Shown one piece after another: positions 2,772 to 60,660 of a stretch of 64,000 bases of DNA. Under the pieces are notes generated by a model. It was given only the letters and a program-made list of their open reading frames with translations, searched no databases and was not told the DNA's origin. This DNA is from Euprymna scolopes. Taxonomy: Eukaryota. Each line of letters opens with the position of its first letter. Position 1 is the stretch's first letter. Made by a program: the position numbers and the translations under genes. Where the stretch lies: NCBI GenBank assembly GCA_053919585.1, contig CM132788.1; one strand, written 5' to 3'.

Positions 2772-3086
2772 GCAGATATATCAAAATTTGAATTTAACTA
2801 TAATAAGTATTATGGTATCTGTTCAGTGCACATTTACCTATAAGTATGGCCAACCACTTATAATTCAGTAACTGTAAAAAATGTTTTTCAAAAATAATCA
2901 ATTATTATAAACAGAACGACTCATAGAAATCTATCTATATTCTTTTTTCATTTTAATATACTTTCATAGAAATGCTTCTGTTATGTCAAAAAAAAACTAT
3001 TTTCTTTATGTCACAAGTGTAACGCTCATACATGAATTCCATGGCTAATATTACATACTGACCCAACGGGTCACGGGTAGTCTAGT
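2380..3086 (+). mobile_element. Non-autonomous Helitron-like element
   Basis: 5' TCTATATAATTATAAAA and 3' hairpin acccaacgggtcacgggt plus CTAG|T. Internal tandem duplication 2476-2580 / 2650-2780. Confidence 0.6.
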
Positions 3087-3092
3087 ATATAT

Positions 3093-3767
3093 ATATACCC
3101 GTTCATATACACTTTTTCATCATAAAGCTAGAACCCAGAATTAGATGGAATCGAGCAATTGCATTAACAATGGAAAACACCAGACCCAAAATGGGTTTCG
3201 ATGTACTGCATCTCATCAGTGACGTGCTCCGACATAGGCGTGAACCCAGGTCGTCACATGCATAAGTGTGCAATACTGACTGCCTAACCGTATGGGCCTC
3301 AGCACAATCCATTGGCTATGCCTCAATTTTAATTTTTATATTTTATCTAGTTCTGCATTCTACTATGTGACAAGTCATGCGTCCTATACAACTAAGATAG
3401 TTACTGTTGGTATGCAGGCGGTAGACATCACATCTACAAACATTAAGTGAAATTACCCGACTCTCCAGATACGATTACAGAACAACCTATTTGTTGAGGG
3501 ACATCACGTCTCTATGAAGGATGAACCGCCTTTTCTACTATTAGACATTAAGAGGAGATTATACATAGATATAAATACCCGTTCACATACACTTTTTCAT
3601 GATAAAGCTACAACCCAGAATTAGATAGAATAGAGCAATTGCATCGACAGCGGACAATGCCAAACCCAAAGTGGGTTTCGATGTACTGCATCTCATCAGT
3701 GAGACATATGCACATAAAGTTATGAACAGTACGTAAGGCCTGAGCAAAGCCAAGCTGAATTGCTAGT
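3093..3767 (+). repeat. Duplicated segment (3093-3310 / 3572-3750) ending in CTAGT, Helitron-like
   Basis: Both copies start ataccgttca(t/c)atacactttttcat; the second ends gcaaagccaagctgaattgCTAGt. Confidence 0.5.
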
Positions 3768-5792: not shown

Positions 5793-5993
5793 ATTTGGAT
5801 TATTCGAATGTTGGTTGTTATTCTCACAACATCTCAGCTGATGTTACTTCCGACCTTCTTCAGGTGAAATTTTTTTAACTCAGGAATCTTTATGTTGAAT
5901 TCTGGAACCTTCTTTAGTTCAACAAGATGTACCTGAAGAAAGAGGTTACATCAACTGAAATGTGAGAGTAACAACAAAGATGAGGATAGTAGT
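5793..5993. mobile_element. Family P pair A: two 3' fragments in inverted, tail-outward orientation
   Basis: - copy 5793-~5910 (reads CTGAAGAAGGTCGGAAGTAACATCAGCTGAGATGTTGTGAGAAT) abuts + copy ~5916-5993 (gatgtacCTGAAGAaagaggttacatcaactGAAAtgtgag). Confidence 0.75.
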
Positions 5994-6443
5994 TTCATCC
6001 CTGTGGGGAATCGTCAGGTTAAGCGAACAGAATTTGTATTAATGATTTCTTTTATATATCCACATTATATTTAGTTCAGATAGGCCTGTACATGTAGATA
6101 TTTAGATGACTCGTCTAAATTATGTTTGAATGAAAAGTTTGAAATTCTAAATGTTAAAGATTCTCAAAACCTATTAAGCTGTAGAAATGAAATAACAAAA
6201 AACTGTACATGCAGAATAAAGTTTACCTTAAGATTACAATATATATAACAAAAAAATAAAATAAAGAAGCTCAGCCATCGACTAATGGAAACATTAACCT
6301 GTGATAAGTAATAACAATGAATCCAATTGGTTAGCTAGCTAGACTAAACGTCATGTGGATATATATAAAAACAATCAGTAACATGAATTCCATGCACTTA
6401 GGCTATCGATTCCCTCTGCATAGCTTATTTGCCATATATATAG

Positions 6444-13605: not shown

Positions 13606-13896
13606 ACTGGATCGGTAAATATTCTAATAAAAGAGTGCTGCTTGCTTTATTTTACATGTAGCAGCCAATGACAAGGGAATTGTTAAATTAATCCTTTGCC
13701 CCCCAAATCAACAGAGATTAGACCATTCCTGTAATGATCGCGTTCTTGTTGATTGCAATGAGATGTTCATTCTGTTCAGTTCTAGAAGATCCACCTTCCC
13801 AGGCTTTACCTTCTCTCTTTGAGAAGGGATTAGTTCATTGCTAATCGCCTGAAACGTCCAGCCACGTTTTGCTGACTTCCTAATGGAATTTTCAAA

Positions 13897-14175
13897 CCCT
13901 GGATGTTATTCTCTCAACGTTTCAACTGATGTAACCTCCAACATTTTTAGGGGCATTTTGTCGAATTCAGAAATCTTTATGTTGAACTCAGAAATCTGTA
14001 AACTCACTTATAGTGAGGATTGAATCTTCAACCTCCGGAAGAGTGTCACTTATAATTAATCATTACTTAGTTCTTATATCCGTTTCATTAAGGGACCTTG
14101 TGTTTACATTATCTGAAATGTTGTGAGAATAACAAGATGAGAACGGTCGTCTGTAATATCTAAATAATACCAATT
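13897..14175. mobile_element. Family P pair B: headed - copy (13897-14097) plus + tail fragment (14101-14175)
   Basis: - copy starts GGTCCCTTAATGAAACGGATA...GGAGGTTGAAGATTCAATCCT and ends GGAGGTTACATCAGTTGAAACGTTGAGAGAATAACATCC; a + tail follows immediately. Confidence 0.75.
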
Positions 14176-18489: not shown

Positions 18490-18580
18490 GTTGGATTCTT
18501 CAGGTTACTGTTCTCATCGTTGGTTGTTATAATCACGACATTTCGACCGATGTAAACTCCGACCTCATTCAGCTTCAACT
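18490..18580 (-). mobile_element. Family P solo tail fragment
   Basis: The - strand reads gCTGAATGAGGTCGGAGTTTACATCGGTCGAAATGTCGTGATTATAACAACCAACGATGAGAACAG. Confidence 0.75.
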
Positions 18581-19697
18581 TTTCCAACTTAATGACATAA
18601 TAGTCGAAATAATTAGGGTTAATTACATCGTTGCTAGAAAAACAGGTAACCAAATTAGAAATATGACAATATATCGGTTTATTTACTAATATAAAAACGT
18701 TTTTTTACTATTATTTTATACATATTACTAGGTTGATTTTAACATAATATGTTCAGCATGTTATAATGTTAAAAAATATATTTTTTTAAAATTTCTACAT
18801 TATCGCCTTTCTGTACGTCGTTTCCCAACGTGATTATTTAATAATTTCAATTGTAGTATTGTTTGCTCATGAAATTATTAATTGAACTAAACTATTATAA
18901 AATTAGAACTAATTTGGTTAAGATAATATTGTTTCAATGGCAACTATCTTAAAGCTGAAAACTTTAATATAATCCGAACCATATCTTATGTTACATGTGA
19001 ATGTATTAATATAATACAAAGAAAAATAAAATAAAACTTTGGATTTTATTAACTTGTAATTTCACCGATCTTCCAAGTTTACAATTTTAAGTTTTTACTT
19101 TTAAAAGTAGCCGAGAAAGTTTGAAAACAAAATATTGTGCTTAAAGGTTAACAACCCTTTAGTTTCACTACATCCCTCTCTGCATGCCTCCAACTGCCAT
19201 CCTTAATTTTCTGAAGGCCGTTCGTCGCTCTCTCTCTCTCTCTCTTCTCTTTTGTTGTTGTTATTGTTGCTATGCTTAGTAATTCAGATGTAACCAATTC
19301 ACCTTACCCCCGGGCTCCTCCCCCCATCTTCAATCACAACAACGCTTTCACTGGTAGTCAAATTTCTCTCCATGCTAAAAACACACCCTCCCCTCCATTT
19401 AACATTCATTGTACACTATTCTAGTTCTTTAGAGTTGAAAAAATTAAGAAAAACACCAAAAAGCTGACTCATAGAAGCTTTTATATTAATGCCTTTAGCC
19501 TGATGATTTCTCGCAGGAATGAAACATAAATGTTTTTATGAGGCTTACTTGCTATACATTTAACACTATTACTACAAAGCTCTACTCGTGTATTGAGCAT
19601 ATACATGTATGCATATATAGTTATATTAAAAGATAATATATTATGTATATGTTTGTTTTACTTGAACAGTTCTCTCCCTCTCTCCCCCCGCCTCTCG

Positions 19698-22439: not shown

Positions 22440-24930
22440 TAGGTCTTTGTGGTTCTTCCACTACAGCCAGACATGAAGGCATTTACTGAGAGGGCATTGA
22501 TGGTGTGGGAATTTAGCCTGTTCCAAATAGAGCCACTCTACAGGAGCCAGGATGATGCTGGATCTGCATCTTCATATTATGTTCCCTGGTGGATGGGTTG
22601 AGGGCTGGAGCGAATAAGCTTTTGCCACAGTTGGGGCAAGATATGTTATAGCAGACATTGCCAAAACCGTTTATTATTTTGTAGGTCGGTAATATATTAG
22701 CACACTGTCCGCAGAATTTTAGAGTAGGAAGGTTGAGACATGTGAGGCATTCAGAGTAGGGCAAATCAGAGATGCCTTGTACAAGTTTTGTTGCTCTATG
22801 CTGGACCCTTTCCAGAGTGTCCTTTTCTTTTTTTAACTTCGGACACTAAACCACAAAAGCATATATTAGTGTGAGTGGATTAGGGGCTTGTTAAAAAGCA
22901 GGAAAAATGTTGTATCCAAAGTTGTAAACGTGTGTTTGATGACTCCGAGAATTCAGTTGGCTTCGTTAACTTGGAATTCAACATGCTTAGTGAAGGACAG
23001 CCTTTGGTCAATGATTACACCAAGATCCTTCTCTTCATTAATCTCGTTCAGAGTGCAGCAGCTTCCATCATTATATTTCATGGTGTATGAAGGGTTGGGA
23101 TTGTTATTACCTAGATGTATTGTTGTACACTTCTCAGAATGGAACTGCATACACATGATGTTTGCCCAGGATTGCAGTTGGTTTAGGTCATTCTACAGAC
23201 TATCCTGCGAATCAGTAATGACTTGAAAAATGTTGGTGTCATCAGCAAACATGAGAATGAAACTCTCCAGCATCTGCGGGATATCAGCAATGAAGAGGAT
23301 AAAAAGCAGTGGACCAAGAACAGAACTCTATGGCATTACTAGTCACATTCGCCCAGTCAGAACATTTCCATTGACCACGTCTTTCTGTTTTTGGTGTGTG
23401 AGAAAACTACGAACCCACTGTAGAGTATAATCCCTGGTTCCGAAGGTATTCAATCAATGAGGAGTCGCTCATGAGGGACAATGTCAAAGGCCTTAGCATA
23501 ATCCAGAAAGATGACATCAACTAGTAGATTTTGACTCAATGCCTCTGTCCAGATGTCCAATGAGGTTAGTTACTATTGACTTGCCAGAAGTAAATCTATG
23601 CTTACAAAATCTTTTTCTTGGGGTGGTCTATAATGTCCTCGAATATTAGTTGTTCCATGATTTTGCAAATAACTGATGTGAGAGAGACTAGTCTGTAATT
23701 AGACTTGTCGCCTTTCTTAAAAATAAGGGTTACAATGGCAGACTTCCACTGACAGGGTACATATCCATTAGTGAAGTTGGTATTGAACAGGATACAGAGA
23801 GAAGTAACAAGGATGTGGGCCAATTCCTTGAGGATCTGTAGGTGTATATAGTTTGGCCCTGGTGACTTGTCAGTCTTGATGAATTGCAGAACTTCTAGAA
23901 TCTTTGCTTCAGTTACAATGACCTTAATTTCTGAATCCATATGCTTGGGAGTGAATGATGGAAAGAAAGATGTATCCTCTTTCATGAAGACACTGTAGTA
24001 CTGTTTATTCAGCACATTGACATTATCTTTATCATCGCAGACAAAGGATCCTTCCCCATTACACATATCTGAGATACCACACTTGATTATTCTTCTGCTA
24101 TTTACAGTTTATATTTACATTTAGTGCCAGGAAGCTTTATTGTTGGAATATGTCTCTCTGGCTAATTTAGACTTAAAGTCTTTTCTAGATTTTATAGTTG
24201 CATGTGAAGCCTCGTTCCTGGCTATGATGTACCTCTGGTAGTCATGATCATCTCTTGTATTGAGATAGCAGATCCAGGAGTGGTGCCTTTTCTTGACTTT
24301 ACAAAGAGCAGCACTGTTCATCCACAGGGGTTTTCTCTTGTCAGTGCATGGGTCCAAAATATTTGTAGGTGTGCATTTTTTTACAGCATCTATAATTGAT
24401 GATTCTAGAAAGTCAGAAATTTCTGACTTTCTAGAATCATCAATTATTGAGTATGTCCTTCCAATTCAAGTCCAGCAAGTTCCTATGGCAGTGTAATCCA
24501 TCTTGGAGCAAGTCTTGCTGGCGGGAGTATACCGATGGCCAAATGAGAACTTAAATGAGATGCCCACATGATCGCTTGCTCCAAGGGGATCAAGTGTCGT
24601 TAACTGATCAATCATCTCATACTCATTGCTAAATATAAGATCATCACTTGTGAAGTTTTGGTTTCCTCTGAACCTCGTGGGTTCAGTTATATGCTGCAGG
24701 AAGTAAGTGTCCATGATACATTCAACAAACCTAGAAGATGGACTGCTGGTATTGACATTCTCGGGGAACTCAGGCATGGAAGTCCAGTTGATAGTGGGAT
24801 GATTAAAATCATCTGCTAGAAGTTTGTGTGTACAGTTCATGGAAGATGCCCAAGAAAGTAATCTGTGTAGGTCTTCATCCTATGGGGTAGCCACTGCTGG
24901 GTTGTCACTCCTTTGGCGACTACCAACTAA
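22440..24930 (-). mobile_element. Decayed CR1-clade LINE ORF2 (APE endonuclease plus reverse transcriptase)
   Basis: Colinear ORF fragments: DFNHPTINW and LGASDH (endonuclease); KPLWMN; KSPGPNYIH, NYRLVSLTSVICK, LFILFIAD, MFADDT, EEKDLGVIID (RT). Many stops and frameshifts. Confidence 0.93.
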
Positions 24931-31575: not shown

Positions 31576-34500
31576 ATGGGTTGTTCCTTAGGAAAACATG
31601 CCAAAAAAGAAGCCGAGGAAGAGAATCTAGTGGATAAACCTGCTGAGAAAAACGAGGAAAATGTTTTATTTGAACGTCCAGCAGCCGGCAGTGGAGAAAA
31701 TGCCCAGGAACCACTTCTTCCTGATGATGCCACAGAAGTGGCGGCTAAAGAACCGGCTCCAGATACCAACGCAGAAATGGACAGTGTAAAAGACGAGCCA
31801 AAAGAGGATGATTCACTGACTGCGGAAGTTGCCAAAGCGATGGCGGCGTCCTCTGTCAAAATAGAAGAACCTGCCCTCTCCGAAACTACTGTCACCAAAG
31901 TGACTACAGAGACACATACAACTTCACATCATGTTGATACAAAGGGTGACAAAGTTGAAAATAAGGCTGTTAGTGATGATATTAATGCCACTGCTATAGA
32001 AGTAGCATCTGAAGTGGTCAAATCGGTAACAGAAGAATGCAAGACCATGGTCACCCGTGAGGTGAGCAAGGTTTCAAGCAGTACCTCAGAAAAGGTGAGC
32101 AAACAGAGCAGCGGCGCTTCCGAGACCATTAATAGGACTAGCGGTGACGTTTCTGAGACAATTACGAAACACACAAGCAGCGCCAGCGAATCGGTCAGCA
32201 AGCTAAGTTGCAGTAGCACCCAGGAGTACACAAGTATGGTCACGTCATCAGTGAGCAAATTTACAGATGCTCAAGGTAATGAAATTGAATCCACACCTAT
32301 TGTCGAAGTAAAGGAAGATGTTGTTACCGAAGTGAAAGAAAAGTCCGAACAATCCAGCAAAACTATCGAAGAGGTCATTGACGATGCAAAACAAGCTGCC
32401 GAAGAGAAAGCAGCCCAGAATGTTGCGGAAGGTACAGCTGATATATCTACAAAGGTCGAAGAAACTGTGATGCCCGTTGTCGAAGAAGGTATTTCTGAAG
32501 TTATTACAACTGCCAAAGAATCTGTACCAAGCTCGTTATTAGATGCAGCAATTCCAGTAACTGTAGAACATGATGCTGCAGTTGTGCAAGAACCAAGCAT
32601 TGCAATTTCTTCAGATGTTGACGTGAATAAAGTGGAGGAACTTGTCCAAGAGTCATCCACGGATGCCCCTGCTGTTGTTGAAGAGGCAGCTGTTGCCCCT
32701 GTTGAAGTTGATCTCACCGAGACAAGTGTGGACAGTGGTAAAATTGCTGAAGCTGATATTACCGAGACAAGTGTTGATGCCATGCTTGTGCCATCAAATG
32801 ATCTCCAAGAAACCAGTGTGGATAGTGGTGCCGTGCAAGAAGCTATCACTGAGACAAGTGTTGATAGCCTCCTTGAATCCTCCCCGAATAACTTTCCGCC
32901 TCCACCTGCTGTGGAAGGAGAAGAGGCAGTTGTTGAAAAAGCAGAAGATATATTTAAGAGTGAACATGAAAAGCAAGTTGAAGCAAGTCAAATCTTAGCT
33001 GCTGATATGATGACTGCTGAGGTTCCTTCTGCACTACCTTCCCCTAAGGGTGCATACGAGGAAGACATCTTAATGCTAAATGAGCAAGTTGAATTTTCTT
33101 CAAAAGAGAATGTTGAACCTATTGTCGAAGAAGGAAAGCAGGAAGTTCCTCTGCTTGAAGCGCCTGTCAGTGAACCAATAGAGGTTGCACCTGAAGCTGT
33201 ACAAGAAATTGAACCAGTAGAGGCTCTACCCGAGGTTGTAGAGGAGACTGAACCAGTTGAGGCTGTACCTGAAGTTGTACAGGAAACCGAACCAGTTAAG
33301 GTTGTACCTGAAGTTGTACAAGAAACTGAACCAATTGAGACTGTACCTGAAGGTGTACAAGAAACTGAACCAGTTGAAACTGTACCCGAAGTTATACCAG
33401 AAACTGAACCAGTAGAGACTGTACCCGAAGTTGTACCGGAAACTGAACCAGTTGAGACTGTACCTGAAAGTGTACAAGAAACTCAACCAGTTGAAACTGT
33501 ACCCGAAGTTGTACCAGAAACTGAACCAGTTGACACTGTACCTGAAGTTGTACCAGAAACTGAACCAGTTGAGACTGTACCTGAAGGTGTACAAGAAACT
33601 CAACCAGTTGAAACTGTACCCGAAGTTGTACAAGAAACTCAACCAGTTGAAACTGTACCTGAAGTTGTACCGGAAACTGAACCAGTTGAGACTGTACCCG
33701 AAGTTGTACCGGAAACTGAACCAGTTGAGACTGCACCCGAAGTTGTACCGGAAACTGAACCAGTTGAGACTGCACCCGAAGTGGTACCGGAAACTGAACC
33801 AGTTGAGACTGTACCCGAAGTTCTACCGGAAACTGAACCAGTTGAGACTGTACCCGAAGTTGTACCGGAAACTGAACCAGTTGAGACTGTACCCGAAGTT
33901 GTACCGGAAACTGAGCCAGTTGAGGCTGTACCCGAAGGTGTACAAGAAACTCAACCAGTTGAGGCTGTACCTGAAGGTATAGAAGAAATTAAATCAGAAG
34001 AGACAGAAGGTGAATTAGAAGAAAAACCTGTTGAGCAAACACTCAGTGAAAAACCAGAAGTATGTGATGTACCAATGAATGAAAATGTTGAAGCTGAAAG
34101 TGAAGAGGTCGTGGATTCCAAGGTTGAAAATGATAACGTATTGGCCGAGGCATCTACCATTCCTGCTGTTATAAGTGAGGGTTTAGAACAAACAGAAAGC
34201 GATGCTGCTAGTGAGGCAGTGGTAACATCAACACCCGAGGAAACTGAAACGGCAGAAGTAATCAGCCAAGAAGAGAAGGCTGACGTTGCCGCCGAGAATT
34301 TACCTGTTATCGAAAACAATGAAACTACAGAAGTTGCTGAGAGTGAAATTGTCTCAAACGGACCCGAACAACCAATAGACATTACTGGTCCCAGTGAAGA
34401 AGTGAGTGCCGGCACTACTGCTGCCAATCTTGTAGAATCTGTCTTAGATAGTGTGAAATCAGAAATTGCCGCTGTAATGGAGGCGTCACCTGCACAAAAG

Positions 34501-34611
34501 TCTGCAACTCTTTCCGAGAATGAGTTGGATAACGAGCTTAGTTCTTCGCAGGATATACAGTCACTTCCAAATGGAGAAAATCAGGTCCAGACACTGGAAG
34601 GTATGCCATAG
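31576..34611 (+). CDS. Intronless 1011-aa acidic, Glu/Val/Pro/Thr-rich, predicted disordered and N-acylated protein; putative membrane scaffold (AKAP-like architecture)
   Basis: 3036-bp ORF in DNA where chance ORFs are short; higher GC than flanks; aaaATGG start context with an in-frame TGA 48 nt upstream; MGCSLGK N-terminus; in-frame repeats with synonymous variation. No recognised homologue. Confidence 0.93.
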   Translation: MGCSLGKHAKKEAEEENLVDKPAEKNEENVLFERPAAGSGENAQEPLLPDDATEVAAKEPAPDTNAEMDSVKDEPKEDDSLTAEVAKAMAASSVKIEEPALSETTVTKVTTETHTTSHHVDTKGDKVENKAVSDDINATAIEVASEVVKSVTEECKTMVTREVSKVSSSTSEKVSKQSSGASETINRTSGDVSETITKHTSSASESVSKLSCSSTQEYTSMVTSSVSKFTDAQGNEIESTPIVEVKEDVVTEVKEKSEQSSKTIEEVIDDAKQAAEEKAAQNVAEGTADISTKVEETVMPVVEEGISEVITTAKESVPSSLLDAAIPVTVEHDAAVVQEPSIAISSDVDVNKVEELVQESSTDAPAVVEEAAVAPVEVDLTETSVDSGKIAEADITETSVDAMLVPSNDLQETSVDSGAVQEAITETSVDSLLESSPNNFPPPPAVEGEEAVVEKAEDIFKSEHEKQVEASQILAADMMTAEVPSALPSPKGAYEEDILMLNEQVEFSSKENVEPIVEEGKQEVPLLEAPVSEPIEVAPEAVQEIEPVEALPEVVEETEPVEAVPEVVQETEPVKVVPEVVQETEPIETVPEGVQETEPVETVPEVIPETEPVETVPEVVPETEPVETVPESVQETQPVETVPEVVPETEPVDTVPEVVPETEPVETVPEGVQETQPVETVPEVVQETQPVETVPEVVPETEPVETVPEVVPETEPVETAPEVVPETEPVETAPEVVPETEPVETVPEVLPETEPVETVPEVVPETEPVETVPEVVPETEPVEAVPEGVQETQPVEAVPEGIEEIKSEETEGELEEKPVEQTLSEKPEVCDVPMNENVEAESEEVVDSKVENDNVLAEASTIPAVISEGLEQTESDAASEAVVTSTPEETETAEVISQEEKADVAAENLPVIENNETTEVAESEIVSNGPEQPIDITGPSEEVSAGTTAANLVESVLDSVKSEIAAVMEASPAQKSATLSENELDNELSSSQDIQSLPNGENQVQTLEGMP
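33172..33990 (+). repeat. Coding minisatellite, 39 bp x 21 (EPVETVPEVVPET)
   Basis: 21 in-frame units counted, 819 bp, no indels. Confidence 0.97.
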
Positions 34612-40253: not shown

Positions 40254-43043
40254 CCTTACTTTGGGGCAATTGCACTGCTTTTTTTGGTAATTTTTTTTAT
40301 ATTACTAATGTTAAATAGTGATTAGATTTAGTTTATTATCTCAAAGTAAAGATATATGAATTTAGAAAGTATACTAAAAAAATGAAGTTGGTGAACCTAT
40401 TATTAGTACATTTATATAAGGAATAAACGTGATGGCGCAGTTGCCCCATACTCTGGGGTAACTGCGCCATTCATGGGATAATCTGTCCCAATCAATATAA
40501 AATTAAAGTATGTTGTGCAAAAACAGTTTGAAATCAATTTTTAGTCCTTCAAATAAAGATCACAAAGTACAGGAAACAGAATATTAAAATATTCTAGAAA
40601 ATCAGAAATAAGTTAATTTTTAGAAAATAAGACACAATGTTGGGAACATACAATATAAAATGAACAAAACTCCTTTACCATACATATAGTCAAGAAGAAA
40701 TGAACTGTCAATTTGTTGACAGGATCACAAAATACCCTACAATATTTAGGATACAATGAGACCTTTAGCACTGAAAAGATCTTTTAAAAATTAATTTCCT
40801 CTTCACACACACTCAGGTTTATCAAATTTTAATATAATTTGGTATGTTGGTGTTACAGTAATATCTGGGACATCGGGCTCTTGGAATGCTAGAAACCCAG
40901 CCATCACTTTCTGTGCTTTTACTTTGTGAAAGTACCGAACATCCCAGGCAACATTTTCAATCAAGTTCAATAAAGTGCCTATAAAATGATAGTCTTTATT
41001 TTTGCCTCTACCTTGATAGTGCATTAAAGCATAGTCACCCTTTTCAAACTCTTCAATCTGTAATGGTTCTGTAGGATTTAGATCAACGACAGTGTCATTA
41101 TTTGACTGAAAGTTCATCCACGTCACTGTCAGATGACTCGTGCACAAGTCTCTGCAAGGCAAGTTTAATTTTCTTGGTAGGCGGCTTTCACGAGGGTGTC
41201 CCAGAAGTTGATGCTTGTAGGTTAGCAACAGTGACACTTTTGCCTGGCTCTACCTGAATTCTCTTGGCTTTTGCTCTTTGTGGTTTTTGAGATGCATCCT
41301 CCCTGAGCTTCCTCAGGTGGTCAATCACTAAGGGGCTGGCAATTTTTCAAGGTGACTCAGCTGGTGTCTTTTTCAGTTTTGCTATTATGCGATTCCTGTT
41401 CAATGAGTAAATACCACATGCCCGAAACCCACTTTTAGCAAGTTCTAAAAAGTTTTCCATCCCCTCTAGTAGGTTATAAAGCAGACCTGGAAATGCATGT
41501 TTCGGTAAGGCGGTATAATGCTTCTCTTGTCCTTTTTTCCAGTCGGTAAGAACCTCACGCCATACACTTTTCATAGGCCCATAAACAGCTACATCAAGGG
41601 GTTGCAAGATGTCAGTACTATTAGGTGGCTAGAATATATATCTGATTTGCAGATCTGCAATATTTCTGCACCAAAATTGGTGCTCAAATTATCCCCAATG
41701 ATAACACTTGAGTGTTCGATCAGACACCCTCATTAGTGCCACTTGAAAAGTCTCATCTGTGCCGTGACGGGGCTTGTAATTCCGTAGTCGATGGAAGTAT
41801 GAAACAGCAACTCTTTTGAACCAGTCAGTGAACAAGTAGTTATCGAACCACCGAGATTCACTTCTGTTATATGTGGCATGAACTGCACCACCTAGAAACC
41901 AATTATCCATGAGGCATTCACGTTTATAAACAACATAAGATGCTAGCACACTCCCACTGGCAGAACAAGCAAACATAACCGATATGGAAGTCTTTGAAAC
42001 ATTCATTACCCTTTCAGCATGTTTAATAGCCTTTCTAATCACTAGTTTTTTCCCCTTAGAATTATCATCCAAATTGACAATGTTTTCAGGTGGGATACCC
42101 TCGAGAGACACGCTAAGATTATCAAAAAAATTATCCACTTCACTAACACATACTGCTGCCCGCTTCCTGCCAATATTTTGACAAACACGATGTGTCAGTT
42201 GTATCTTTTCATAAATGCATCCACCCAATCCATCCCAGGCAAATTGTCTGTAAATTGGACTACATTCCTACCAGCTTTATCTAAATAGAATTTAACAAAA
42301 TAGCATAATTCAATCTTGTAAAAAGCATACCCAAAGTCACTAAGGGCAGCAGCATGACCTACTATACAATCCTCTTTCTCTGGAAGCAAGTCTTCCAGTA
42401 ACATTACTTGGCCGAGTATCACTAATCCTCTCACGTAATGATCTCCTGGGTATGCCCATTTTATGAGAAACTGTTGATTGACTCGCGATCAGACACCCTC
42501 ATTAGTGCCACTTGAAAAGTCTCATCTGTGCCGTGACGGGGCTTGTAATTCCGCACCATTTTAGTGGTTACGACTCGAATTTACCTGTAAATAAAAAAAA
42601 AACTCTTTATTTAATTATTATTATTATATATGCATTAATATCAGGATATAAAAATGACACAATTACCCCTTACAAAGATGGCGCAGTTACCCCATTAGTA
42701 CATATCAGGTATTATGCTTCAGGTTATTATCTCAAATGTTTGTCAGAACATACCTTATAGTACTGACCAGAATAAGTGATAGTATTTTGAAGTATGCAGG
42801 CAACTTTATTCATATCTTACTAGAGCTTAGCGTTTCCAGCTAATAATGTTGCAAAAAAAAAAAATCATTTTCCTCAAAATAGAATACATATAATTCATGA
42901 AACAATGAAAATTAGGGATTATGAAGAAAAATGACTAGTAATTAAATTCCAATTGGCTATATTTTCATAATTGCTAAAATTTTTGGCAACCACGCATATA
43001 AAGAACACTTTTCGTTAGTTAGCACAATTACCCCAAAGTATGG
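40254..43043 (-). mobile_element. pogo/Tigger-like (Tc1/mariner superfamily) DNA transposon, 2790 bp
   Basis: Imperfect 23-bp TIRs (ccttactttggggcaattgcact / agcacaattaccccaaagtatgg), each flanked by TA; encloses a decayed transposase. Confidence 0.85.
40803..42559 (-). pseudogene. DDE_1 (CENP-B/pogo-type) transposase pseudogene
   Basis: MVRNYKP start and GIPRRSL psq-type HTH; NLPGMDWVDAFMKR; IVNLD; SVMFACSASG; IIGDNL; PPNSTDILQPLDVAVYGPMK; SGFRACGIY. Split by frameshifts. Confidence 0.9.
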
Positions 43044-43452
43044 TACTCATTAAAAAAAAAAAAATAAATAAATAAAAAAATTTTTTAAAAAGAGAAAATT
43101 ATTGATGCTTTTGTCTTTTGTCGTATCCATGGTAACTGAGAAGAGGAAATATAGGTAAATCTTCCATTCAGTTCCTATTCTCTCAATAATCGTAGCCATA
43201 CCCCACACCCCTTCCACTTGAAGAATAGATTTTTATTTTTATTTTACTAAATGACTATTTAAAGTATCACCTGTATATTAAAAAGGTTACCCTACTTTTT
43301 TTCAACTAAATTGCCTATATGTGAGTGTTTATCTTAACTAATATTTCATACTGGATGATTCTCCACCACCCTGCTAAAAAAATGCCACCTGTCTAATCAT
43401 TAATAAAATTCAAAATCCTTTCTGTAATCCAACCATTTTTGATACAAATGTA

Positions 43453-43536
43453 TTAGGTTGATGCAAAAATAATGTCACTTTTTGACGTATATATATCTGA
43501 TTAAAAAAAAACGACATTATTTTGGCACCAACCTAA
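43453..43536. mobile_element. 84-bp mariner-type MITE (MADE1-like)
   Basis: TA|ttaggttgatgcaaaaataatgtc...gacattattttggcaccaacctaa|TA. Confidence 0.85.
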
Positions 43537-44953
43537 TATTTCAGTCGATGCCTAACTTGTCCACTAATTTTCAGTTATTAATGTCTAACTGTTTGTTTTA
43601 TAGTTGTTAAATAATATGCAGGGACACTGATAGTTTCATCAGTAGGAGGTATAATACTGAATGAGCTTCACATTCACTGAACCATAACCTCTCAGGTTTT
43701 TATCTATGAAGTTAGTGATAATGACCTTTTCTGAACTGAAGAGGGTGCATATTTGTGGCATATCATTGAATGTTAAAATAAAGACTGTTGGATATTCATA
43801 ACTGAAACTTGGTGGTTTATCAGGCATAAATTGAAGTTTATTTGCACCAAATATGGTTGGATTGTAGAAATATTGTGAATTTCATGTATCATTTTTTAAG
43901 GCGAAGGAGGTGTTACCCTATATTTACTTGACTAAAAAGAAAAAAACAAAAATGTGTATAGGTTTAATGGAACAAAAAATTGTTTTGTGTGTGTGTGTGC
44001 GTGTGCGTATTTTTTTTTTTTTTTTTTTTAATTGGCTATGGAATACTTTACATCCTATTTTATGGATCGAATTCCTATAATCTGTGATCTTTTGAACTTT
44101 GATTATTTTTTTTATCATTGATGATTATTTTTTATCTTAAAAATTTGAACTTTTAGTGACCATGCATTTTCTGTAAACTGACAAACTTCCATGCATTCGG
44201 AAAAAAAAAACCAACAACAAAAAAACAGAACAATCATTACATCGAAAAGCTATATAAAGTCAGGATGAAAAAAAAAAATTTTTTTTTTTAATAAGTTTTT
44301 TTTTTAAGATCACAATATCGTCTTCCTAGAGAACTGTGAATTTAAGGGGGAAAAAAGAAAAAATAGAATTAAAAAAAATGTAAAACCTAGATATTTTTTA
44401 CTGCTTGCTTAGCCGCTACGATTTGATGATATCTGATATCATTAATAACCCCAAACATATTTATAACTGCTGTGTGGATATAACAATAATAATGTCTGAT
44501 TGATATTCAGACTTTTTTGTTTAATACAATATTTTAGGAAATTGATTTCAACATTTTCATTTGATATGAGTTTGATGTCTGTGGGAAGATCCGATTCTTG
44601 TCATAAAAAACTCGATTTGCATATTTAAAAAAATTATGAACACTTTTTTTTTTTTTTTTTTGCTATATTCTTTAATTTTAATTTCAATTATATTTTTTTT
44701 AAATGTTCAACATTTCTCTTTTTTCTTACCAAATGTATTCTAAACTGATTAAAAAAAGTATAAAAACTGAACATTTTTGATGTTATTAGTTTTAATCATC
44801 ATTAACACCTTTCCTTCCTTTTGTTTTCCAGTCGGAGATCAAGAAATGCATATCATAAAAACATTTACAAAAATAATAAAAATAAAACAACAAAAAACAT
44901 TAGAACAAGTTGTACATTTTTATGTTGGGGAAGTTTTTAGATGAGGGTTGATC

Positions 44954-45531
44954 ATTTGGATTATTCGAACTACTGGTTTCATCTTGGATGTTATTCTAAA
45001 CGTTTTGCCTGATGTAAACTCCGACTTTCTTCAGCAATCTTTATGTTGAATTTGTAAATCTGTAACAGAATTTCACTAAATCCTTTATTCAATCCTCGTG
45101 AATGGATTGTTCTCGTCCCATCAGCCATAACCATGTAGAAGTCTTATAAAAATTCATTATTATATTCTTAGTTCTGAAACTTCAACCTCCAGAAGATTGT
45201 CACTTAGAATTGATTATACTTGGCACTTTTATCCGTTGAGCCAGGGTCTATGTGGACACAGGATGCAAAAGACAAAGTACAAATCAGTACAGGAGATCTT
45301 AAGATTATGATTAAGAAATACTTAAGATTTCTAACCAGTAATGGCTGATGGACCAAGAACAATGTAACTCCTCCATCTGTAGATGAAATAAATGGTTCAG
45401 TTCAAAATTTTTTTACAGATTTTTCATTTCAACAAAGTGTACTTGAAGAAGGTTGGTACTTTGTTCGAAACTTTGTGAGAGAATGAGAGAATAACCTCCA
45501 AGATGAGAACAGAGGTGTGGATAATCCAAAT
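44954..45531. mobile_element. Family P pair C: full - copy (44954-45248) plus + 3' half (~45320-45531)
   Basis: Outer ends atttggattattcg... and ...ggataatccaaat; - head GACCCTGGCTCAACGGATAAAAG; hammerhead-like cores at ~44995-45035 (-) and ~45442-45480 (+). Confidence 0.8.
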
Positions 45532-45611
45532 TTTACATTTTTATTTCTGACATTGTTATTAGTTTTAAAGTCCAACACCTTTCTATTTCATATTTCGAAA
45601 TTTTTCAAATT

Positions 45612-46120
45612 AGGATGGTTAGTATTTTCATATTTTCGACTGATGTAATCTTTGACTTTCTTCAGCTGCATCTCTTTGAACTTGAAAATCTGTAGGAATT
45701 TCATCCTGAAGCATTTATTTAATCCATGGGTGTAGATTGTTTTCATTCTATCAGCCATGAGCAAGTAGAAGTGTTAATTGTTATATTATCCTTAGCTATT
45801 ATCACCAGTAGTATGGGCACTTGGTGCAACGGATAAAGGCGTTGATTGAGTGACAGGTTTCTGGAGATTGATAGTTGAATCCTTACTACAGATGATAATA
45901 ACTAAGAATATGATAATTAACACTACTACCCGGTTATGGCTGATGGAGCAAGAACAATCTACATATGATCTGTTTTGTTTGAAATTCTGTAGAAATAATT
46001 GAGTTTGACATAAAGATTCTCAAATTTTTAAAGATGTACCTGAAGAAGGTCTGAACTTACATCGGCCAAAACGTTGTGAAAATAATAACCAAGATGAGAA
46101 TAATAATCCAAATAATCTAA
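45612..46120. mobile_element. Family P pair D: headless - copy (45612-~45812) plus full + copy (45815-46120)
   Basis: + head GGGCACTTGGTGCAACGGATAAAGGCG...GGAGATTGATAGTTGAATCC; tail gatgtacCTGAAGAaggtctgaacttacatcggccAAAAcgttgtg...aataatccaaat. Confidence 0.8.
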
Positions 46121-46557
46121 CACAAAGTTCGATTTAATTTTACTAAGATGCTTTTTTAATTCTCTAATATATTAGCGCAATACTGTAAAAAATAATCTTT
46201 TTAAGTTAGATATTATGTGTTGCTGAAAGATTTCCTTTCCTTGTTATCATTTTTTTTTTTTTCATAACATTTTGGCCGCTATGCTGTTTGCCATTAACGA
46301 TTATGACCATAATCCTCATTGAAGGAATTTAAGAAGAAAAACTAATACTGCTATATATCGAGGTGGCCTTGATGAAGAAGGATACAAAATGAGTTGTCAA
46401 GAGAGTCAAAAGTTAAAATTTGACATAACATGCATAGGAAATCGTGGGTGAAAATTAGGAAGTGAAAGTCAGGGACCACGTGACCAAGAAGTGAGGGACA
46501 GAAATCGGTGGGAGGCAAGGCGAACACAGGTGTTGGCATGTAGCTTTTCATATATAG

Positions 46558-46617
<60 letters not shown>

Positions 46618-47318
46618 CATGAGTCTAAGATAAAGCAAAATAAAGAACTATATAATGTACGGGTATAAATACCTTTATATCAATTAATGATGTAATTATG
46701 TAATTAATAACGAATTGGCTACAGACCTACCCCTACAAAGACTCCCCAACCAGAGACTTACCCAGTTCAACAGAACAGTTCTAGTGAGCAAATACGCATT
46801 TCAGAGCCTTCGTTTTTATCTCTTTTTTTTTATAAAATTTTTCTCATCCTTATATCTAACTATATCATCATAATGGTATACAACAATTCGAGAAGGGCTT
46901 TATAACACACTACTGCAGGAATGTTTCCCTGCAGATTACAACATAATTGTCTTTAAATCCAACATCAACTTGTCATAAACTATTCCATAAGTAATTGAAT
47001 TTAGTTCATACTGCATTGATCAATTTTAGTACTTTCATAGTGTTTTTACTGACAGCCATTCTGTCTTGTTAACCTTTAGTGGTTTGTGGTCTTGATAAGT
47101 ATTTGTCTAATCGTAAAGAAAAAAAATATTTAAAAAGCATGACATACAGAATAACAGCATTCTACTTCAGTGGCTCGAATAAAAGAAGGTTACCAATTAT
47201 AACAAAAGGTGCTCAAAAAAGGTCGGAGAGTGCAGCAGTCGAAACGCGTAAATTGCAAGAGTTTCAAACATGTAAATAACAATATCTAATTTCAAAATCG
47301 TCAAGTGTAGATATTATA

Positions 47319-54532: not shown

Positions 54533-54968
54533 ATTTCGATTATTATGGACTTCTATTCTCAGCTTGGTTATTTTCACAACACTTTAGCAGATGCAACCTT
54601 CAACCTTCTTCAGATGCATCTTTTTAAACTTGTGAATCTATACAAACTAATGAATTGAACCTTCCAAAAGACGTTGCTTAACAATCAGTTCTGAGATTGC
54701 AGGTTCAATCCTGACTACAGGTGATGATAACTAGGGCCAGAACAACAGCATATTCTTTTCATTGTTTTGACTCTCTAGTGTGTATTCGTTGATAAATTAT
54801 ATGCTTTTATATAGAGTGATGTGGTTCTCGGTTGATTAACTGTCGGATATTTATTCAAGAATGAAAACAATGATAAGAATAGTCTGTTGTCATGGCCTTA
54901 GTGATAACTAAAAAAAATGAACATTTCCACTCGGTCATGGTTGATGGAATGAGAATAATCTACACTCA
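54533..54968. mobile_element. Family P pair E: - tail fragment (54533-~54645) plus + copy interrupted by a MITE
   Basis: - core reads gatgcatCTGAAGAaggttgaaggttgcatc; + copy has an intact B box GGTTCAATCC (54702-54711) and body cggtcatggttgatggaatgagaa. Confidence 0.7.
54732..54900. mobile_element. hAT-type MITE nested in a family P copy
   Basis: TAGGGCC...GGCCTTA ends with ~40-bp imperfect TIRs; 8-bp TSD atgataac/gtgataac. Confidence 0.75.
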
Positions 54969-55621
54969 TAGACGATGTCTTCTTCTGTAAAAATAATTAT
55001 CATTGTCACCTAAATATTATTTAAACAACTAAAACAAAGATATCTCGTTCTTATTTATTTATGGAAAGTTTTAATAATTAACTCTTTTTAAAAAAAATAA
55101 ACATTCTTTTCTTCTTACCATGAAAATATTTGTCATCTTGATATTCTTTAAATAAATGTTAATTTTTAATTCTTTTTTAATTATAACGATTAAACTTGTA
55201 TTAAAATTAAATTAAAATAAAAAATAATGCAAAAATTAGGTTTTTGAAAATTAGTCAAGTCAATAGGACGACAGAATTCGATTTTGGAACAATTCATTTT
55301 AAAATCAGTAGTGTTAGAATTTTTATTTTACCTTAGTAACACCAGTTAATTTTCAATTACTTAGGTATGATTTGCCAGATGCAATGGGTTACATGATATG
55401 ATTAATAGTATGTGACCTTAGGGTCAGCTTAATCCCGTATGATGGTTTGTTGGTTACTTTAATAGATTGAAAGTTGGAGCTCAGTTTCTGCCAGAATGTT
55501 AGCCTAGATACACGACATGTAAGATTCAGATTGGTAGACAGACAACTGTTTCGTGATGTTTCAGTCAAAGGCTACTTGAAGTTAAGGAAATGGATATTCA
55601 CTATGTTTCGGAATTTTCACA

Positions 55622-55945
55622 AGGACCCATGACACAACAGGTAAAATTGATAAAACAGTAATAATCAGTTCTAAATTACAGTTTTCTGGAAATTGTAGGT
55701 TCAATCTTCAGTATGCTGGACTAAGAACACAATTATGGATTTAAAACTTCTAACCGGTCATGGCTGACAGAATGAGAGCAAACTACTCTTTGTGCATTGA
55801 ATAAAGGGTTCTGTTCAAAATTATGTATAGATTCCTGAGTTTTATGAGATGTAACTAAAAAGGTTGACGATTACATCGGCCTAAATGTTGTAGAAATAAT
55901 ATCCAAAATGAGAACAGTAGTCTGAATAAATCAAATAATCCAAAT
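55622..55945 (+). mobile_element. Family P full-length solo copy (~325 bp)
   Basis: Head ggacccatgacacaacaggtaa, B box GGTTCAATC, body taaccggtcatggctga, decayed hammerhead-like core, end aataatccaaat. Confidence 0.75.
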
Positions 55946-60554: not shown

Positions 60555-60660
60555 TGTGATTTCTGACTTTGACTAGACATAAGAGGCTACATCGTCTGAA
60601 ACATTGTTGTGATAATAACATCCAACAAAATTACTACAGAAGTCGAATAATCCAAATAAT
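60555..60660 (+). mobile_element. Family P solo tail fragment
   Basis: gaggctacatcgtctGAAAcattgttgtgataataacatcc...gtcgaataatccaaat. Confidence 0.65.

What the first reader, a model, noticed from the sequence alone, without database searches (positions are those of the whole stretch)
46033..46095. Consensus of the family P tail folds as a minimal type I hammerhead ribozyme
By-eye consensus of about 12 copies: GAUG-UAC-CUGAAGA-A-GGUCG-GAGKUUACAU-CGGCC-GAAA-CGUU|GUG-AGAAUAA-CAUC. It has the CUGANGA and GAAA core boxes, a 5-bp stem II (GGUCG/CGGCC), a vestigial palindromic stem III (ACGU) and a bulged stem I (UAC/GUG plus GAUG/CAUC). Palindromic mini-stem III hammerheads acting as dimers are established for PLEs. 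Caveats: no single copy here is intact (this one has AAAA for GAAA, 5822-5870 has GAGA, 18530-18575 has CUGAAUGA with a GUC site) and the proximal stem I is weak. Activity would be ancestral or reside in copies elsewhere.
Basis: partly seen in the sequence, partly recalled or inferred. Interest (0 to 1): 0.8.

Follow-up and report, generated by a model that had tools for sequence, protein, structure and literature searches.

The report
Decayed Penelope-type minimal hammerhead in SINE tail
The tail of an old, dead short jumping element in this AT-rich animal genome carries, once its copies are averaged, the sequence signature of the "minimal hammerhead" self-cutting RNA already known from Penelope-like retrotransposons, so it is a new example of a known kind rather than something new.

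Summary
Iterative nhmmer finds 14 arms of family P in the window. A rule-based, CpG-aware consensus of their tails reads TAC-CTGAAGA-A-GGTCGG-(8 nt)-TCGGCC-GAAA-CGT-T-GTG. A min-HHR descriptor modelled on Cervera and de la Peña 2014 accepts it, and it found nothing in 20 Mb of composition-matched random sequence.

The consensus also shows three published signatures that my descriptor allowed but did not demand. These are an unpaired base between A9 and G10.1, a G10.1-C11.1 pair, and a palindromic ACGU with no helix III loop.

The arms lie as head-to-head inverted pairs, one full-length copy next to a 5'-truncated inverted one. This is the scar described for Penelope-like elements, not a MITE.

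The limits are real:
- No copy is intact, and copies are 58-86% identical to the consensus.
- Plain majority rule breaks two pairs.
- Rfam gives no hammerhead hit.
- There is no covariation.
- Helix I has only 3 contiguous pairs.
- A rival hairpin is predicted to be much more stable.

Catalysis is untested, and published min-HHRs cleave poorly in vitro.

Verdict: a real but decayed Penelope-type minimal hammerhead motif, a new member of a known kind. Earlier notes of this scan describe the same kind of element on other DNA of this genome.

The parts
46033..46078 (+). Hammerhead-like segment of the focal copy. Helix I 5' strand TAC 46037-46039; CTGAAGA 46040-46046; extra A 46047; helix II 46048-46053 with 46062-46067 (5 of 6 pairs); AAAA 46068-46071 (G12 lost); CGT 46072-46074; U17 46075, so the predicted cut lies after 46075; helix I 3' strand GTG 46076-46078.
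45816..46120 (+). Full-length family P copy (right arm of pair B). It has an A-box/B-box-like head at 45816-45885, a body, the hammerhead-like module, and a tail of about 45 nt that ends in AATAATC-type repeats.
45612..45818 (-). Inverted, 5'-truncated family P arm abutting the head of the full-length copy (left arm of pair B). Its hammerhead-like segment is at 45627-45673. Both core boxes are kept, but helices II and III are broken.
44954..45262 (-). Full-length family P copy with head (left arm of pair A). Its hammerhead-like segment is at 44978-45042: CTGAAGA is kept, G12 has changed to A, and GTG is deleted.
45298..45531 (+). Inverted, 5'-truncated partner arm of pair A. Its hammerhead-like segment is at 45435-45507, with C3 changed to T and indels in helix II.
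5793..5994 (.). Short head-to-head pair, both arms truncated near model position 100. The hammerhead-like segments are 5805-5871(-), which has GAGA for GAAA, and 5925-5984(+), which keeps both boxes but has deletions in helices II and III.
13891..14157 (.). Head-to-head pair with unequal arms, 13891-14019(-) and 14100-14157(+). In the segment 13893-13958(-) the first core box is broken (G5 deleted, G8 changed to A), while GAAACGTT is kept.
18493..18609 (-). Solitary 5'-truncated arm. The segment 18513-18580 has helix II at 6 of 6 pairs, GAAA and a GTC site, but the first box reads CTGAATGA.
54538..54656 (-). 5'-truncated arm. The segment 54558-54621 keeps CTGAAGA, but GAAA has become AAAG.
55620..55929 (+). 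Solitary full-length copy with a decayed head. In the segment 55847-55912 helix II has 6 of 6 pairs, and both core boxes are mutated (CT-AAAA, TAAA).
60560..60653 (+). Solitary arm truncated inside the hammerhead-like module; GAAAC is kept.

Best explanation
Family P is an old, dead, short non-coding retroelement of about 300-330 bp.

**Layout.** Its 5' end carries Pol III-type A-box-like and B-box-like motifs. Its 3' module, in the ancestral (consensus) state, carries a Penelope-type minimal type I hammerhead motif, followed by a tail of about 45 nt.

**The motif.** It reads UAC / CUGAAGA / unpaired A / 6-bp helix II (GGUCGG:UCGGCC) with an 8-nt loop / GAAA / a palindromic CG in place of helix III / U17 / GUG.

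**How it most likely worked (inferred, not shown).**
1. The master copy was transcribed.
2. Its 3' module, taken from or shared with an autonomous Penelope-like element, was bound by that element's RT/GIY-YIG protein.
3. Target-primed reverse transcription produced 5'-truncated copies.
4. This often left an inverted 5'-truncated copy next to the 5' end. That accounts for the tail-outward pairs seen here.

**Possible cleavage.** The hammerhead could cut after GAAACGUU only when two motifs pair through ACGU, forming a double hammerhead with helix I made in trans. Cutting would probably be weak and may need protein, as reported for other PLE hammerheads.

**The copies in this window.** All are neutral relics. 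None can be active.
For: **Shown here:**
- The CpG-aware consensus passes a min-HHR descriptor: 1-nt bulge, helix II of 6 bp, loop of 8, no helix III loop, helix I of 3 bp.
- The descriptor has 0 hits in 200 simulated windows and 0 in 20 Mb of random sequence.
- The consensus has three features that the authors of the family say emerged without being in their own descriptor (PMC4209133), and that mine allowed but did not demand. [quoted passage not shown] It also has the long helix II they describe.
- Most of the core breaks lie at CpG sites, with CG/TG/CA column mixes.
- Core positions are slightly better kept than other positions of the same base class: 0.83 against 0.75, P=0.025.
- Architecture: 8 of 14 arms form 4 head-to-head pairs. 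In pairs A and B, one arm is full-length with a head and the other is 5'-truncated. There are also solitary arms and variable truncation points.
[quoted passage not shown] 100-700 bp ... in opposite strands' (PMC4209133).
- The same window holds an unrelated element with canonical type I hammerheads at 3717-3640 and 3233-3163 (Rfam HH9, E 0.015 and 0.099). So hammerhead retroelements do live in this genome.

**From established knowledge:** PLE hammerheads act as dimers with low in-vitro activity (PMC4209133, PMC6765202). One PLE hammerhead cleaves only with its protein and is not needed for insertion in vitro (PMC11167929).
Against: - No copy in the window is intact.
- Plain majority consensus fails the descriptor. 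The match depends on two CpG restorations.
- No Rfam hammerhead model hits any copy at E<=10.
- There is no covariation beyond shuffles.
- Helix I has only 3 contiguous pairs. The published min-HHRs usually have 4-5, though D. virilis has 2.
- A rival hairpin, GAUGUA/UACAUC, is kept equally well. It is predicted to dominate both the monomer and the dimer.
- No direct tandem of family P, which would favour dimer formation in cis, is seen in the window.
- No Penelope-like RT/EN gene lies in the window, so the partner is unidentified.
- The head is not recognised as a tRNA by ARAGORN or by the Rfam tRNA model.
Confidence: 0.75

Rival explanations
1. The hammerhead likeness is a coincidence. The conserved 3' module is a protein-recognition hairpin, either the GGUCGG/UCGGCC stem or the GAUGUA/UACAUC stem. 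The reverse transcriptase of a LINE or PLE partner would use it, and RNA cleavage would play no part.
For: - The rival hairpin is the predicted MFE and is kept as well as the hammerhead pairs.
- The most invariant block is TTACAT in the loop, not the core.
- There is no covariation and no Rfam hit.
- Published data show that a PLE hammerhead is dispensable for insertion in vitro (PMC11167929).
- The element ends in short AATAATC-type repeats, as the tails of some LINEs do (the comparison is from my own knowledge).
Against: - The chance of the full descriptor match is about 1e-5 per family.
- Three non-required family signatures are also present.
- The inverted-pair scar is typical of PLEs, not of LINEs.
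- The only LINE fragment in the window (24466-24840) shares no tail with family P.
Confidence: 0.15
2. Family P is a DNA transposon derivative, a MITE or foldback element. On this reading the 'tail' is a long terminal inverted repeat, and the hammerhead-like string sits in it by chance.
For: Arms 45616-45816 and 45881-46091 are inverted repeats (69% over 216 nt). The element at 5793-5994 is nearly a perfect palindrome.
Against: - The arms of a pair are unequal. One carries the A/B-box head and the other is cut off at variable points (model positions 25, 28, 97-106, 190).
- At least four arms are solitary (18493-18609, 55620-55929, 60560-60653, 54538-54656).
- This fits 5' truncation of a retro-copy. 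It does not fit a transposase substrate, which needs both ends.
- I did not examine target-site duplications.
Confidence: 0.05

Closest known systems
Minimal hammerhead ribozymes (min-HHR) of metazoan Penelope-like elements (Cervera and de la Peña 2014, PMC4209133; also Lünse, Weinberg and Breaker 2017, cited in PMC6765202, not readable here)
   Same: - Type I topology with CUGANGA and GAAA boxes.
- No helix III hairpin, only a palindromic ACGU.
- An unpaired base between A9 and G10.1, and a G10.1-C11.1 pair.
- A long helix II (6 bp) and a short helix I.
- Pairs of motifs on opposite strands a few hundred bp apart.
- Many dispersed, truncated, heterogeneous copies.
   Different: - Here the motif sits in a short non-coding element with a Pol III-like head, not in the pLTR of a coding PLE.
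- Helix I has only 3 contiguous pairs.
- Every copy in the window is mutated.
- Activity and the PLE partner are unknown.
Schistosoma Sm-alpha / Sj-alpha SINE-like elements, and animal non-LTR retrozymes (Ferbeyre 1998 and Laha 2000 as cited in PMC6765202; PMC7229834; bioRxiv 10.64898/2026.07.22.740005)
   Same: They are short non-autonomous retroelements that join a promoter-like head to a type I hammerhead. They are probably dependent on Penelope-like elements.
   Different: - Those carry canonical hammerheads with a helix III hairpin, and Rfam recognises them.
- They are usually in direct tandem arrays that can give circular RNAs.
- Family P has the minimal form and occurs as single or inverted copies, never in direct tandem in this window.
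- The element at 3086-3717(-) of this window is of the canonical tandem kind.
CChMVd (+) hammerhead with an extra A between A9 and G10.1 (De la Peña and Flores 2001, cited in PMC4209133; details from my own knowledge)
   Same: [quoted passage not shown]
   Different: It is a type III viroid hammerhead with full helices and is otherwise unrelated.

Membership tests
Metazoan PLE min-HHR | CUGANGA box (C3-A9) | tested here: met
   The consensus reads CTGAAGA, with per-position support of 8-11 of the 9-11 copies that have a letter there. It is exact in 6 of the 10 copies that cover it.
Metazoan PLE min-HHR | GAAA box (G12-A15.1) | tested here: met
   The consensus reads GAAA (G 8/12, A 12/12, 11/12, 11/12). 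It is exact in 7 of 12 copies. The focal copy has AAAA.
Metazoan PLE min-HHR | Helix II closed by G10.1-C11.1, usually 6-8 bp | tested here: met
   GGTCGG pairs with TCGGCC over 6 bp, including 2 G.U pairs, in the CpG-aware consensus. Plain majority gives one C-A mismatch at a decayed CpG. Across the copies, 72% of cells are paired.
Metazoan PLE min-HHR | Unpaired nucleotide between A9 and G10.1 | tested here: met
   A in 10 of 11 copies. PMC4209133 lists this as a conserved feature.
Metazoan PLE min-HHR | No helix III hairpin; palindromic 15.2-16.2 that allows a dimer | tested here: met
   GAAA-CG-T gives ACGT in the CpG-aware consensus. Majority rule gives ATGT, which still self-pairs through wobble (87.5% of cells paired).
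Metazoan PLE min-HHR | Cleavage-site H17 (not G) after U16.1 | tested here: met
   T in 9 of 10 copies and C in one, which gives a GTC site.
Metazoan PLE min-HHR | Helix I of about 4-5 bp next to the core | tested here: inconclusive
   There are only 3 contiguous pairs (TAC/GTG). A distal GATG/CATC stem lies behind a 7-nt bulge, but its third base is an A/T tie at 5:5. The D. virilis PLE hammerhead has 2 bp.
Metazoan PLE min-HHR | Consensus families with compensatory changes in the helices | tested here: inconclusive
   The covariation score is 0.193 against 0.195 in shuffles, and 74.2% of cells are paired against 73.8%. Twelve dead copies of one family have no power for this test.
Metazoan PLE min-HHR | Residence in a PLE pLTR, or in an insertion with the PLE scar | tested here: inconclusive
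   The inverted 5'-truncated partner arms fit. There is no PLE RT/EN gene in the window, and the rest of the genome cannot be reached with these tools.
Metazoan PLE min-HHR | Self-cleavage as a dimer | not testable with these tools
   This needs in-vitro transcription and cleavage assays. Thermodynamic prediction does not favour the double hammerhead (-12.3 against -35.5 kcal/mol).
Canonical type I hammerhead (Rfam clan CL00010: Hammerhead_1, HH9, HH10) | Covariance-model score, with a helix III hairpin | tested here: not met
   There is no hammerhead match at gathering score. There is none at E<=10 in the whole window or in 45500-46600. The same models do find the unrelated element at 3163-3233 and 3640-3717.
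tRNA-derived SINE | tRNA-like head with Pol III A and B boxes | tested here: inconclusive
   The three-copy head consensus shows TGGCnCAACGG and GGTTCAATCC by eye. ARAGORN finds no tRNA. The Rfam tRNA model gives no hit at E<=10 in a 96-nt search.
MITE / foldback DNA transposon | Two equivalent terminal inverted repeats on every copy | tested here: not met
   The arms are unequal, with variable 5' truncation, and several are solitary.

The most novel reading that the evidence does not exclude
Family P, together with the similar families that earlier notes report in this genome, would represent a distinct class of SINE. It would be transcribed by Pol III from a tRNA-derived head and copied by Penelope-like reverse transcriptase/GIY-YIG enzymes rather than by LINEs. 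The minimal hammerhead module would serve as the recognition or processing handle. The obligatory inverted partner arms would turn read-through transcripts into long hairpin RNAs. I found no paper in the held library that formally describes a SINE-PLE partnership.
Probability: 0.4. Interest if true: 0.5.

Novelty: new member of a known kind. Interest (0 to 1): 0.3.

Why it matters
If the reading is right, this is one more family showing that minimal hammerhead motifs ride on short non-autonomous elements, not only on coding Penelope-like elements. It adds a lineage with a very large genome, said in earlier unchecked notes to be a mollusc or cephalopod.

It bears on an open question: what PLE hammerheads are for. 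They could serve processing, circularisation or protein recognition. A SINE that keeps only the 3' module isolates the minimal cis-requirement.

The copies in this window are dead, and the kind is published. The value is therefore mainly for annotation, because these motifs escape the Rfam models.

Tried and rejected
- **Rfam scans.** Gathering threshold on the whole window, E<=10 on the whole window, and E<=10 on 45500-46600 all gave no hammerhead at family P. This is expected for a motif without helix III and with mutated copies, so I do not count it as refutation.
- **MITE reading.** This was my first idea. I rejected it after mapping unequal and solitary arms.
- **Covariation on the 12 copies.** Uninformative.
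- **Public metagenome scans.** I used two degenerate patterns of the tail. The first found nothing. The second gave 10 loci, all chance matches with no upstream core and no homology.
- **Sequence look-up in earlier scan notes.** Blank.
- **Search for a PLE gene in the window.** I scanned 16 of the 28 ORFs of at least 90 aa against Pfam and found only a LINE-type endonuclease fragment and a DDE_1 fragment.
- **Taxon check.** The 1011-aa ORF in the ESM Atlas search gave no informative hit. The mollusc/cephalopod origin rests on earlier unchecked notes.
- **Weak family P match at 47186-47246.** It has GAAACGCGT, a 6-nt palindrome, and has no other relatives in the window. I left it out of the consensus.
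[quoted passage not shown] 2017 (PMC5785218) is not in the library. I therefore could not compare with published mollusc min-HHR sequences.
- **Target-site duplications.** Not analysed. The copies are about 25% diverged.

Full report
**What is at the coordinates.** The stretch 46033-46095 reads GATG-TAC-CTGAAGA-A-GGTCTG-AACTTACA-TCGGCC-AAAA-CGT-T-GTG-AAAATAATAACCAAGAT. It has the first hammerhead box, a near-complete helix II, AAAA where GAAA should be, and the ACGT palindrome. The window is AT-rich, about 30-33% G+C, and is clearly eukaryotic repeat-rich DNA.

**The repeat family.** BLAST of 45400-46300 against the window and iterative nhmmer find 14 arms of one family:
- 5951-5793(-) and 5854-5994(+)
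- 14019-13891(-) and 14100-14157(+)
- 18609-18493(-)
- 45199-44958(-) and 45298-45527(+)
- 45818-45612(-) and 45854-46117(+)
- 47186-47246(+), weak
- 54656-54538(-) and 54881-55022(+)
- 55679-55929(+)
- 60560-60653(+)

Eight of these form four head-to-head (tail-outward) inverted pairs.

My first reading was a MITE with long terminal inverted repeats. The anatomy does not fit that:
- In pairs A (44954-45531) and B (45612-46120), one arm is full-length and the other is cut off at its 5' side (model positions 28 and 25).
- The full-length arm carries an extra 5' head of about 75 nt with A-box-like TGGCnCAACGG and B-box-like GGTTCAATCC.
- Other pairs are truncated at positions of about 100 or 190.
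- Several arms are solitary.

This is the pattern of a retro-copied element with 5' truncation. [quoted passage not shown] 2021, PMC8557442). Cervera and de la Peña likewise noted [quoted passage not shown] (PMC4209133).

The head is not recognised as a tRNA by ARAGORN or by the Rfam tRNA model, even in a 96-nt search. "tRNA-headed" therefore remains a by-eye statement.

**A proper consensus.** I aligned 13 tails with MAFFT, left out the weak 47186 copy, and took the majority base per column.

Majority rule gives ...AGATGTAC CTGAAGA A GGTCGG AGGTTACA TCAGCC GAAA TGT T GTGAGAATAACA... .

I then applied a rule blind to all columns: call CG where the dinucleotide column is a CG/TG/CA mixture. It changed five sites. 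Two lie in the motif: TCAGCC becomes TCGGCC (CA5/CG4/TG1), and GAAATGTT becomes GAAACGTT (TG5/CG3/CA1).

Helix II is 6 bp, including two G.U pairs. The third base of the distal 'CAUC' is a 5:5 A/T tie.

Copies are 58-86% identical to the consensus. Every copy has at least one disabling change.

**Is it more than chance?** I wrote a descriptor after the published min-HHR. It requires:
- helix I of at least 3 bp
- CUGANGA
- a bulge of 0-1 nt
- helix II of at least 4 bp, with a loop of 3-20 nt
- GAAA
- a 15.2-16.2 pair, with no loop or a palindromic loop of 2-4 nt
- U16.1, then H17

The results were as follows:
- Real window: 0 hits. 200 simulated windows: 0 hits.
- 20 Mb of first-order Markov sequence with the window's composition: 0 hits.
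- The CpG-aware consensus passes. The plain majority consensus does not.
- My analytic estimate is about 1.4e-8 per position, or about 1e-5 for a 330-nt consensus on both strands.

Even allowing for a few dozen families inspected, chance is unlikely.

[quoted passage not shown] Family P has all three. It also has the "larger than usual" helix II and the short helix I.

Core positions are slightly better kept than other positions of the same base class (0.83 against 0.75, stratified permutation P=0.025). This is a weak hint at best.

**What speaks against a working ribozyme.**
- Rfam finds no hammerhead at family P at gathering score or at E<=10. The same models do find an unrelated canonical hammerhead in this window when given a short stretch.
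- On the 12-copy alignment A1, the hammerhead pairs are formed in 74.2% of cells against 73.8% in shuffles, with no excess of compensatory changes. The copies simply decay from a pairing-competent ancestor.
- A rival hairpin, GAUGUA (helix I 5' strand and upstream) with UACAUC (loop 2 and helix II 3' strand), is kept equally well at 74.6%.
- That hairpin dominates the predicted folds. The monomer MFE is -13.3 kcal/mol against -7.0 for the hammerhead fold. The dimer MFE is -35.5 against -12.3 for the double hammerhead.
- Helix I has only three contiguous pairs.
- No direct tandem of family P, which would bring two motifs together in one transcript, occurs in the window.

These points do not remove the motif identification, because published min-HHRs share this weakness. 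[quoted passage not shown] An Anolis PLE hammerhead cleaved only in the presence of its protein and was dispensable for insertion in vitro (PMC11167929). They do mean that "folds as" and "self-cleaves" are inferences.

**Mechanism proposed.**
- Shown: the motif in the consensus, the PLE-type insertion architecture, CpG-driven decay, and the presence of other hammerhead elements in the same window.
- Inferred: the master copy was transcribed, possibly by Pol III from the A/B-box-like head. Its 3' module mimics that of an autonomous Penelope-like element and recruits that element's RT/GIY-YIG protein. Target-primed reverse transcription with 5' truncation, plus a second inverted copy, gives the observed pairs. 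The hammerhead, pairing with a second motif through ACGU, would cut after GAAACGUU.
- Unknown: whether cleavage matters for mobility or the module serves only as a protein handle.

**Comparison with what is known.** The closest family is the metazoan PLE min-HHR. The membership table shows six sequence features met, three inconclusive (helix I length, covariation, residence in a PLE) and catalysis untestable here. Family P is not a member of the canonical Rfam hammerhead families. It resembles Schistosoma Sm-alpha and the animal non-LTR retrozymes in joining a promoter-like head to a hammerhead. It differs in using the minimal form and in never being in direct tandem here.

**Earlier notes of this scan.** Notes on other DNA of the same genome describe the same kind of element repeatedly: a tRNA-Arg-like head, a minimal hammerhead tail and a Penelope-style inverted arm. 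They say the genome is a 5.9-Gb mollusc, probably a cephalopod. I used them as leads only. The architecture, the motif and the presence of canonical hammerhead elements were re-tested here. The taxon and the genome-wide counts were not.

**Verdict.** It is a new member of a known kind and of modest interest.

Noticed in passing
window 3086-3717, minus strand: An unrelated element in partial direct tandem (137-nt repeat, 88% identical, 480-nt spacing). Each unit carries a canonical type I hammerhead, at 3717-3640 and 3233-3163 (CTGATGA-GATG-CAGTA-CATC-GAAAC-CCAyTTTGGGT). Rfam Hammerhead_HH9 scores 18.5 and 21 bits, below the gathering score. The whole-window Rfam scans missed it; it appeared only in a 700-nt search. 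It looks like an animal retrozyme or a PLE-type partial tandem.
   Followed up: partly
family P consensus, corresponding to window 46033-46038 with 46058-46063: A 6-bp hairpin, GATGTA/TACATC, competes with the hammerhead fold. It is the predicted MFE and is kept in 74.6% of cells across the copies. TTACAT is the most invariant block of the whole tail. It could be an alternative conformer or a protein-binding hairpin.
   Followed up: partly
window 47186-47274 (+): A lone weak relative of the family P tail. It has GGTCGG...CAGTC-GAAA-CGCG-T-A, a 6-nt palindrome ACGCGT where family P has ACGT. The first box is decayed (TCAAAAA). It has no other copies in the window.
   Followed up: partly
window 43451-43538, both strands: A near-perfect palindromic hairpin that matches Rfam mir-548 on both strands (54 and 47 bits, below the gathering score of 90). 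It is probably a MITE hairpin rather than a microRNA gene.
   Followed up: no
window 24466-24840 (-) and 41689-42228 (-): Transposon protein fragments: a LINE-type endonuclease (PF14529, E 3e-4) and a DDE_1 transposase piece (PF03184, E 1.3e-3). Both are below the Pfam cut-offs. No Penelope-like RT or GIY-YIG domain appeared among the 16 ORFs that were scanned, out of 28 ORFs of at least 90 aa.
   Followed up: partly
window 31576-34611 (+): A 1011-aa intronless ORF in a locally G+C-richer stretch (45%). It has no Pfam family and only low-scoring look-alikes of disordered, acidic proteins in the ESM Atlas search.
   Followed up: partly
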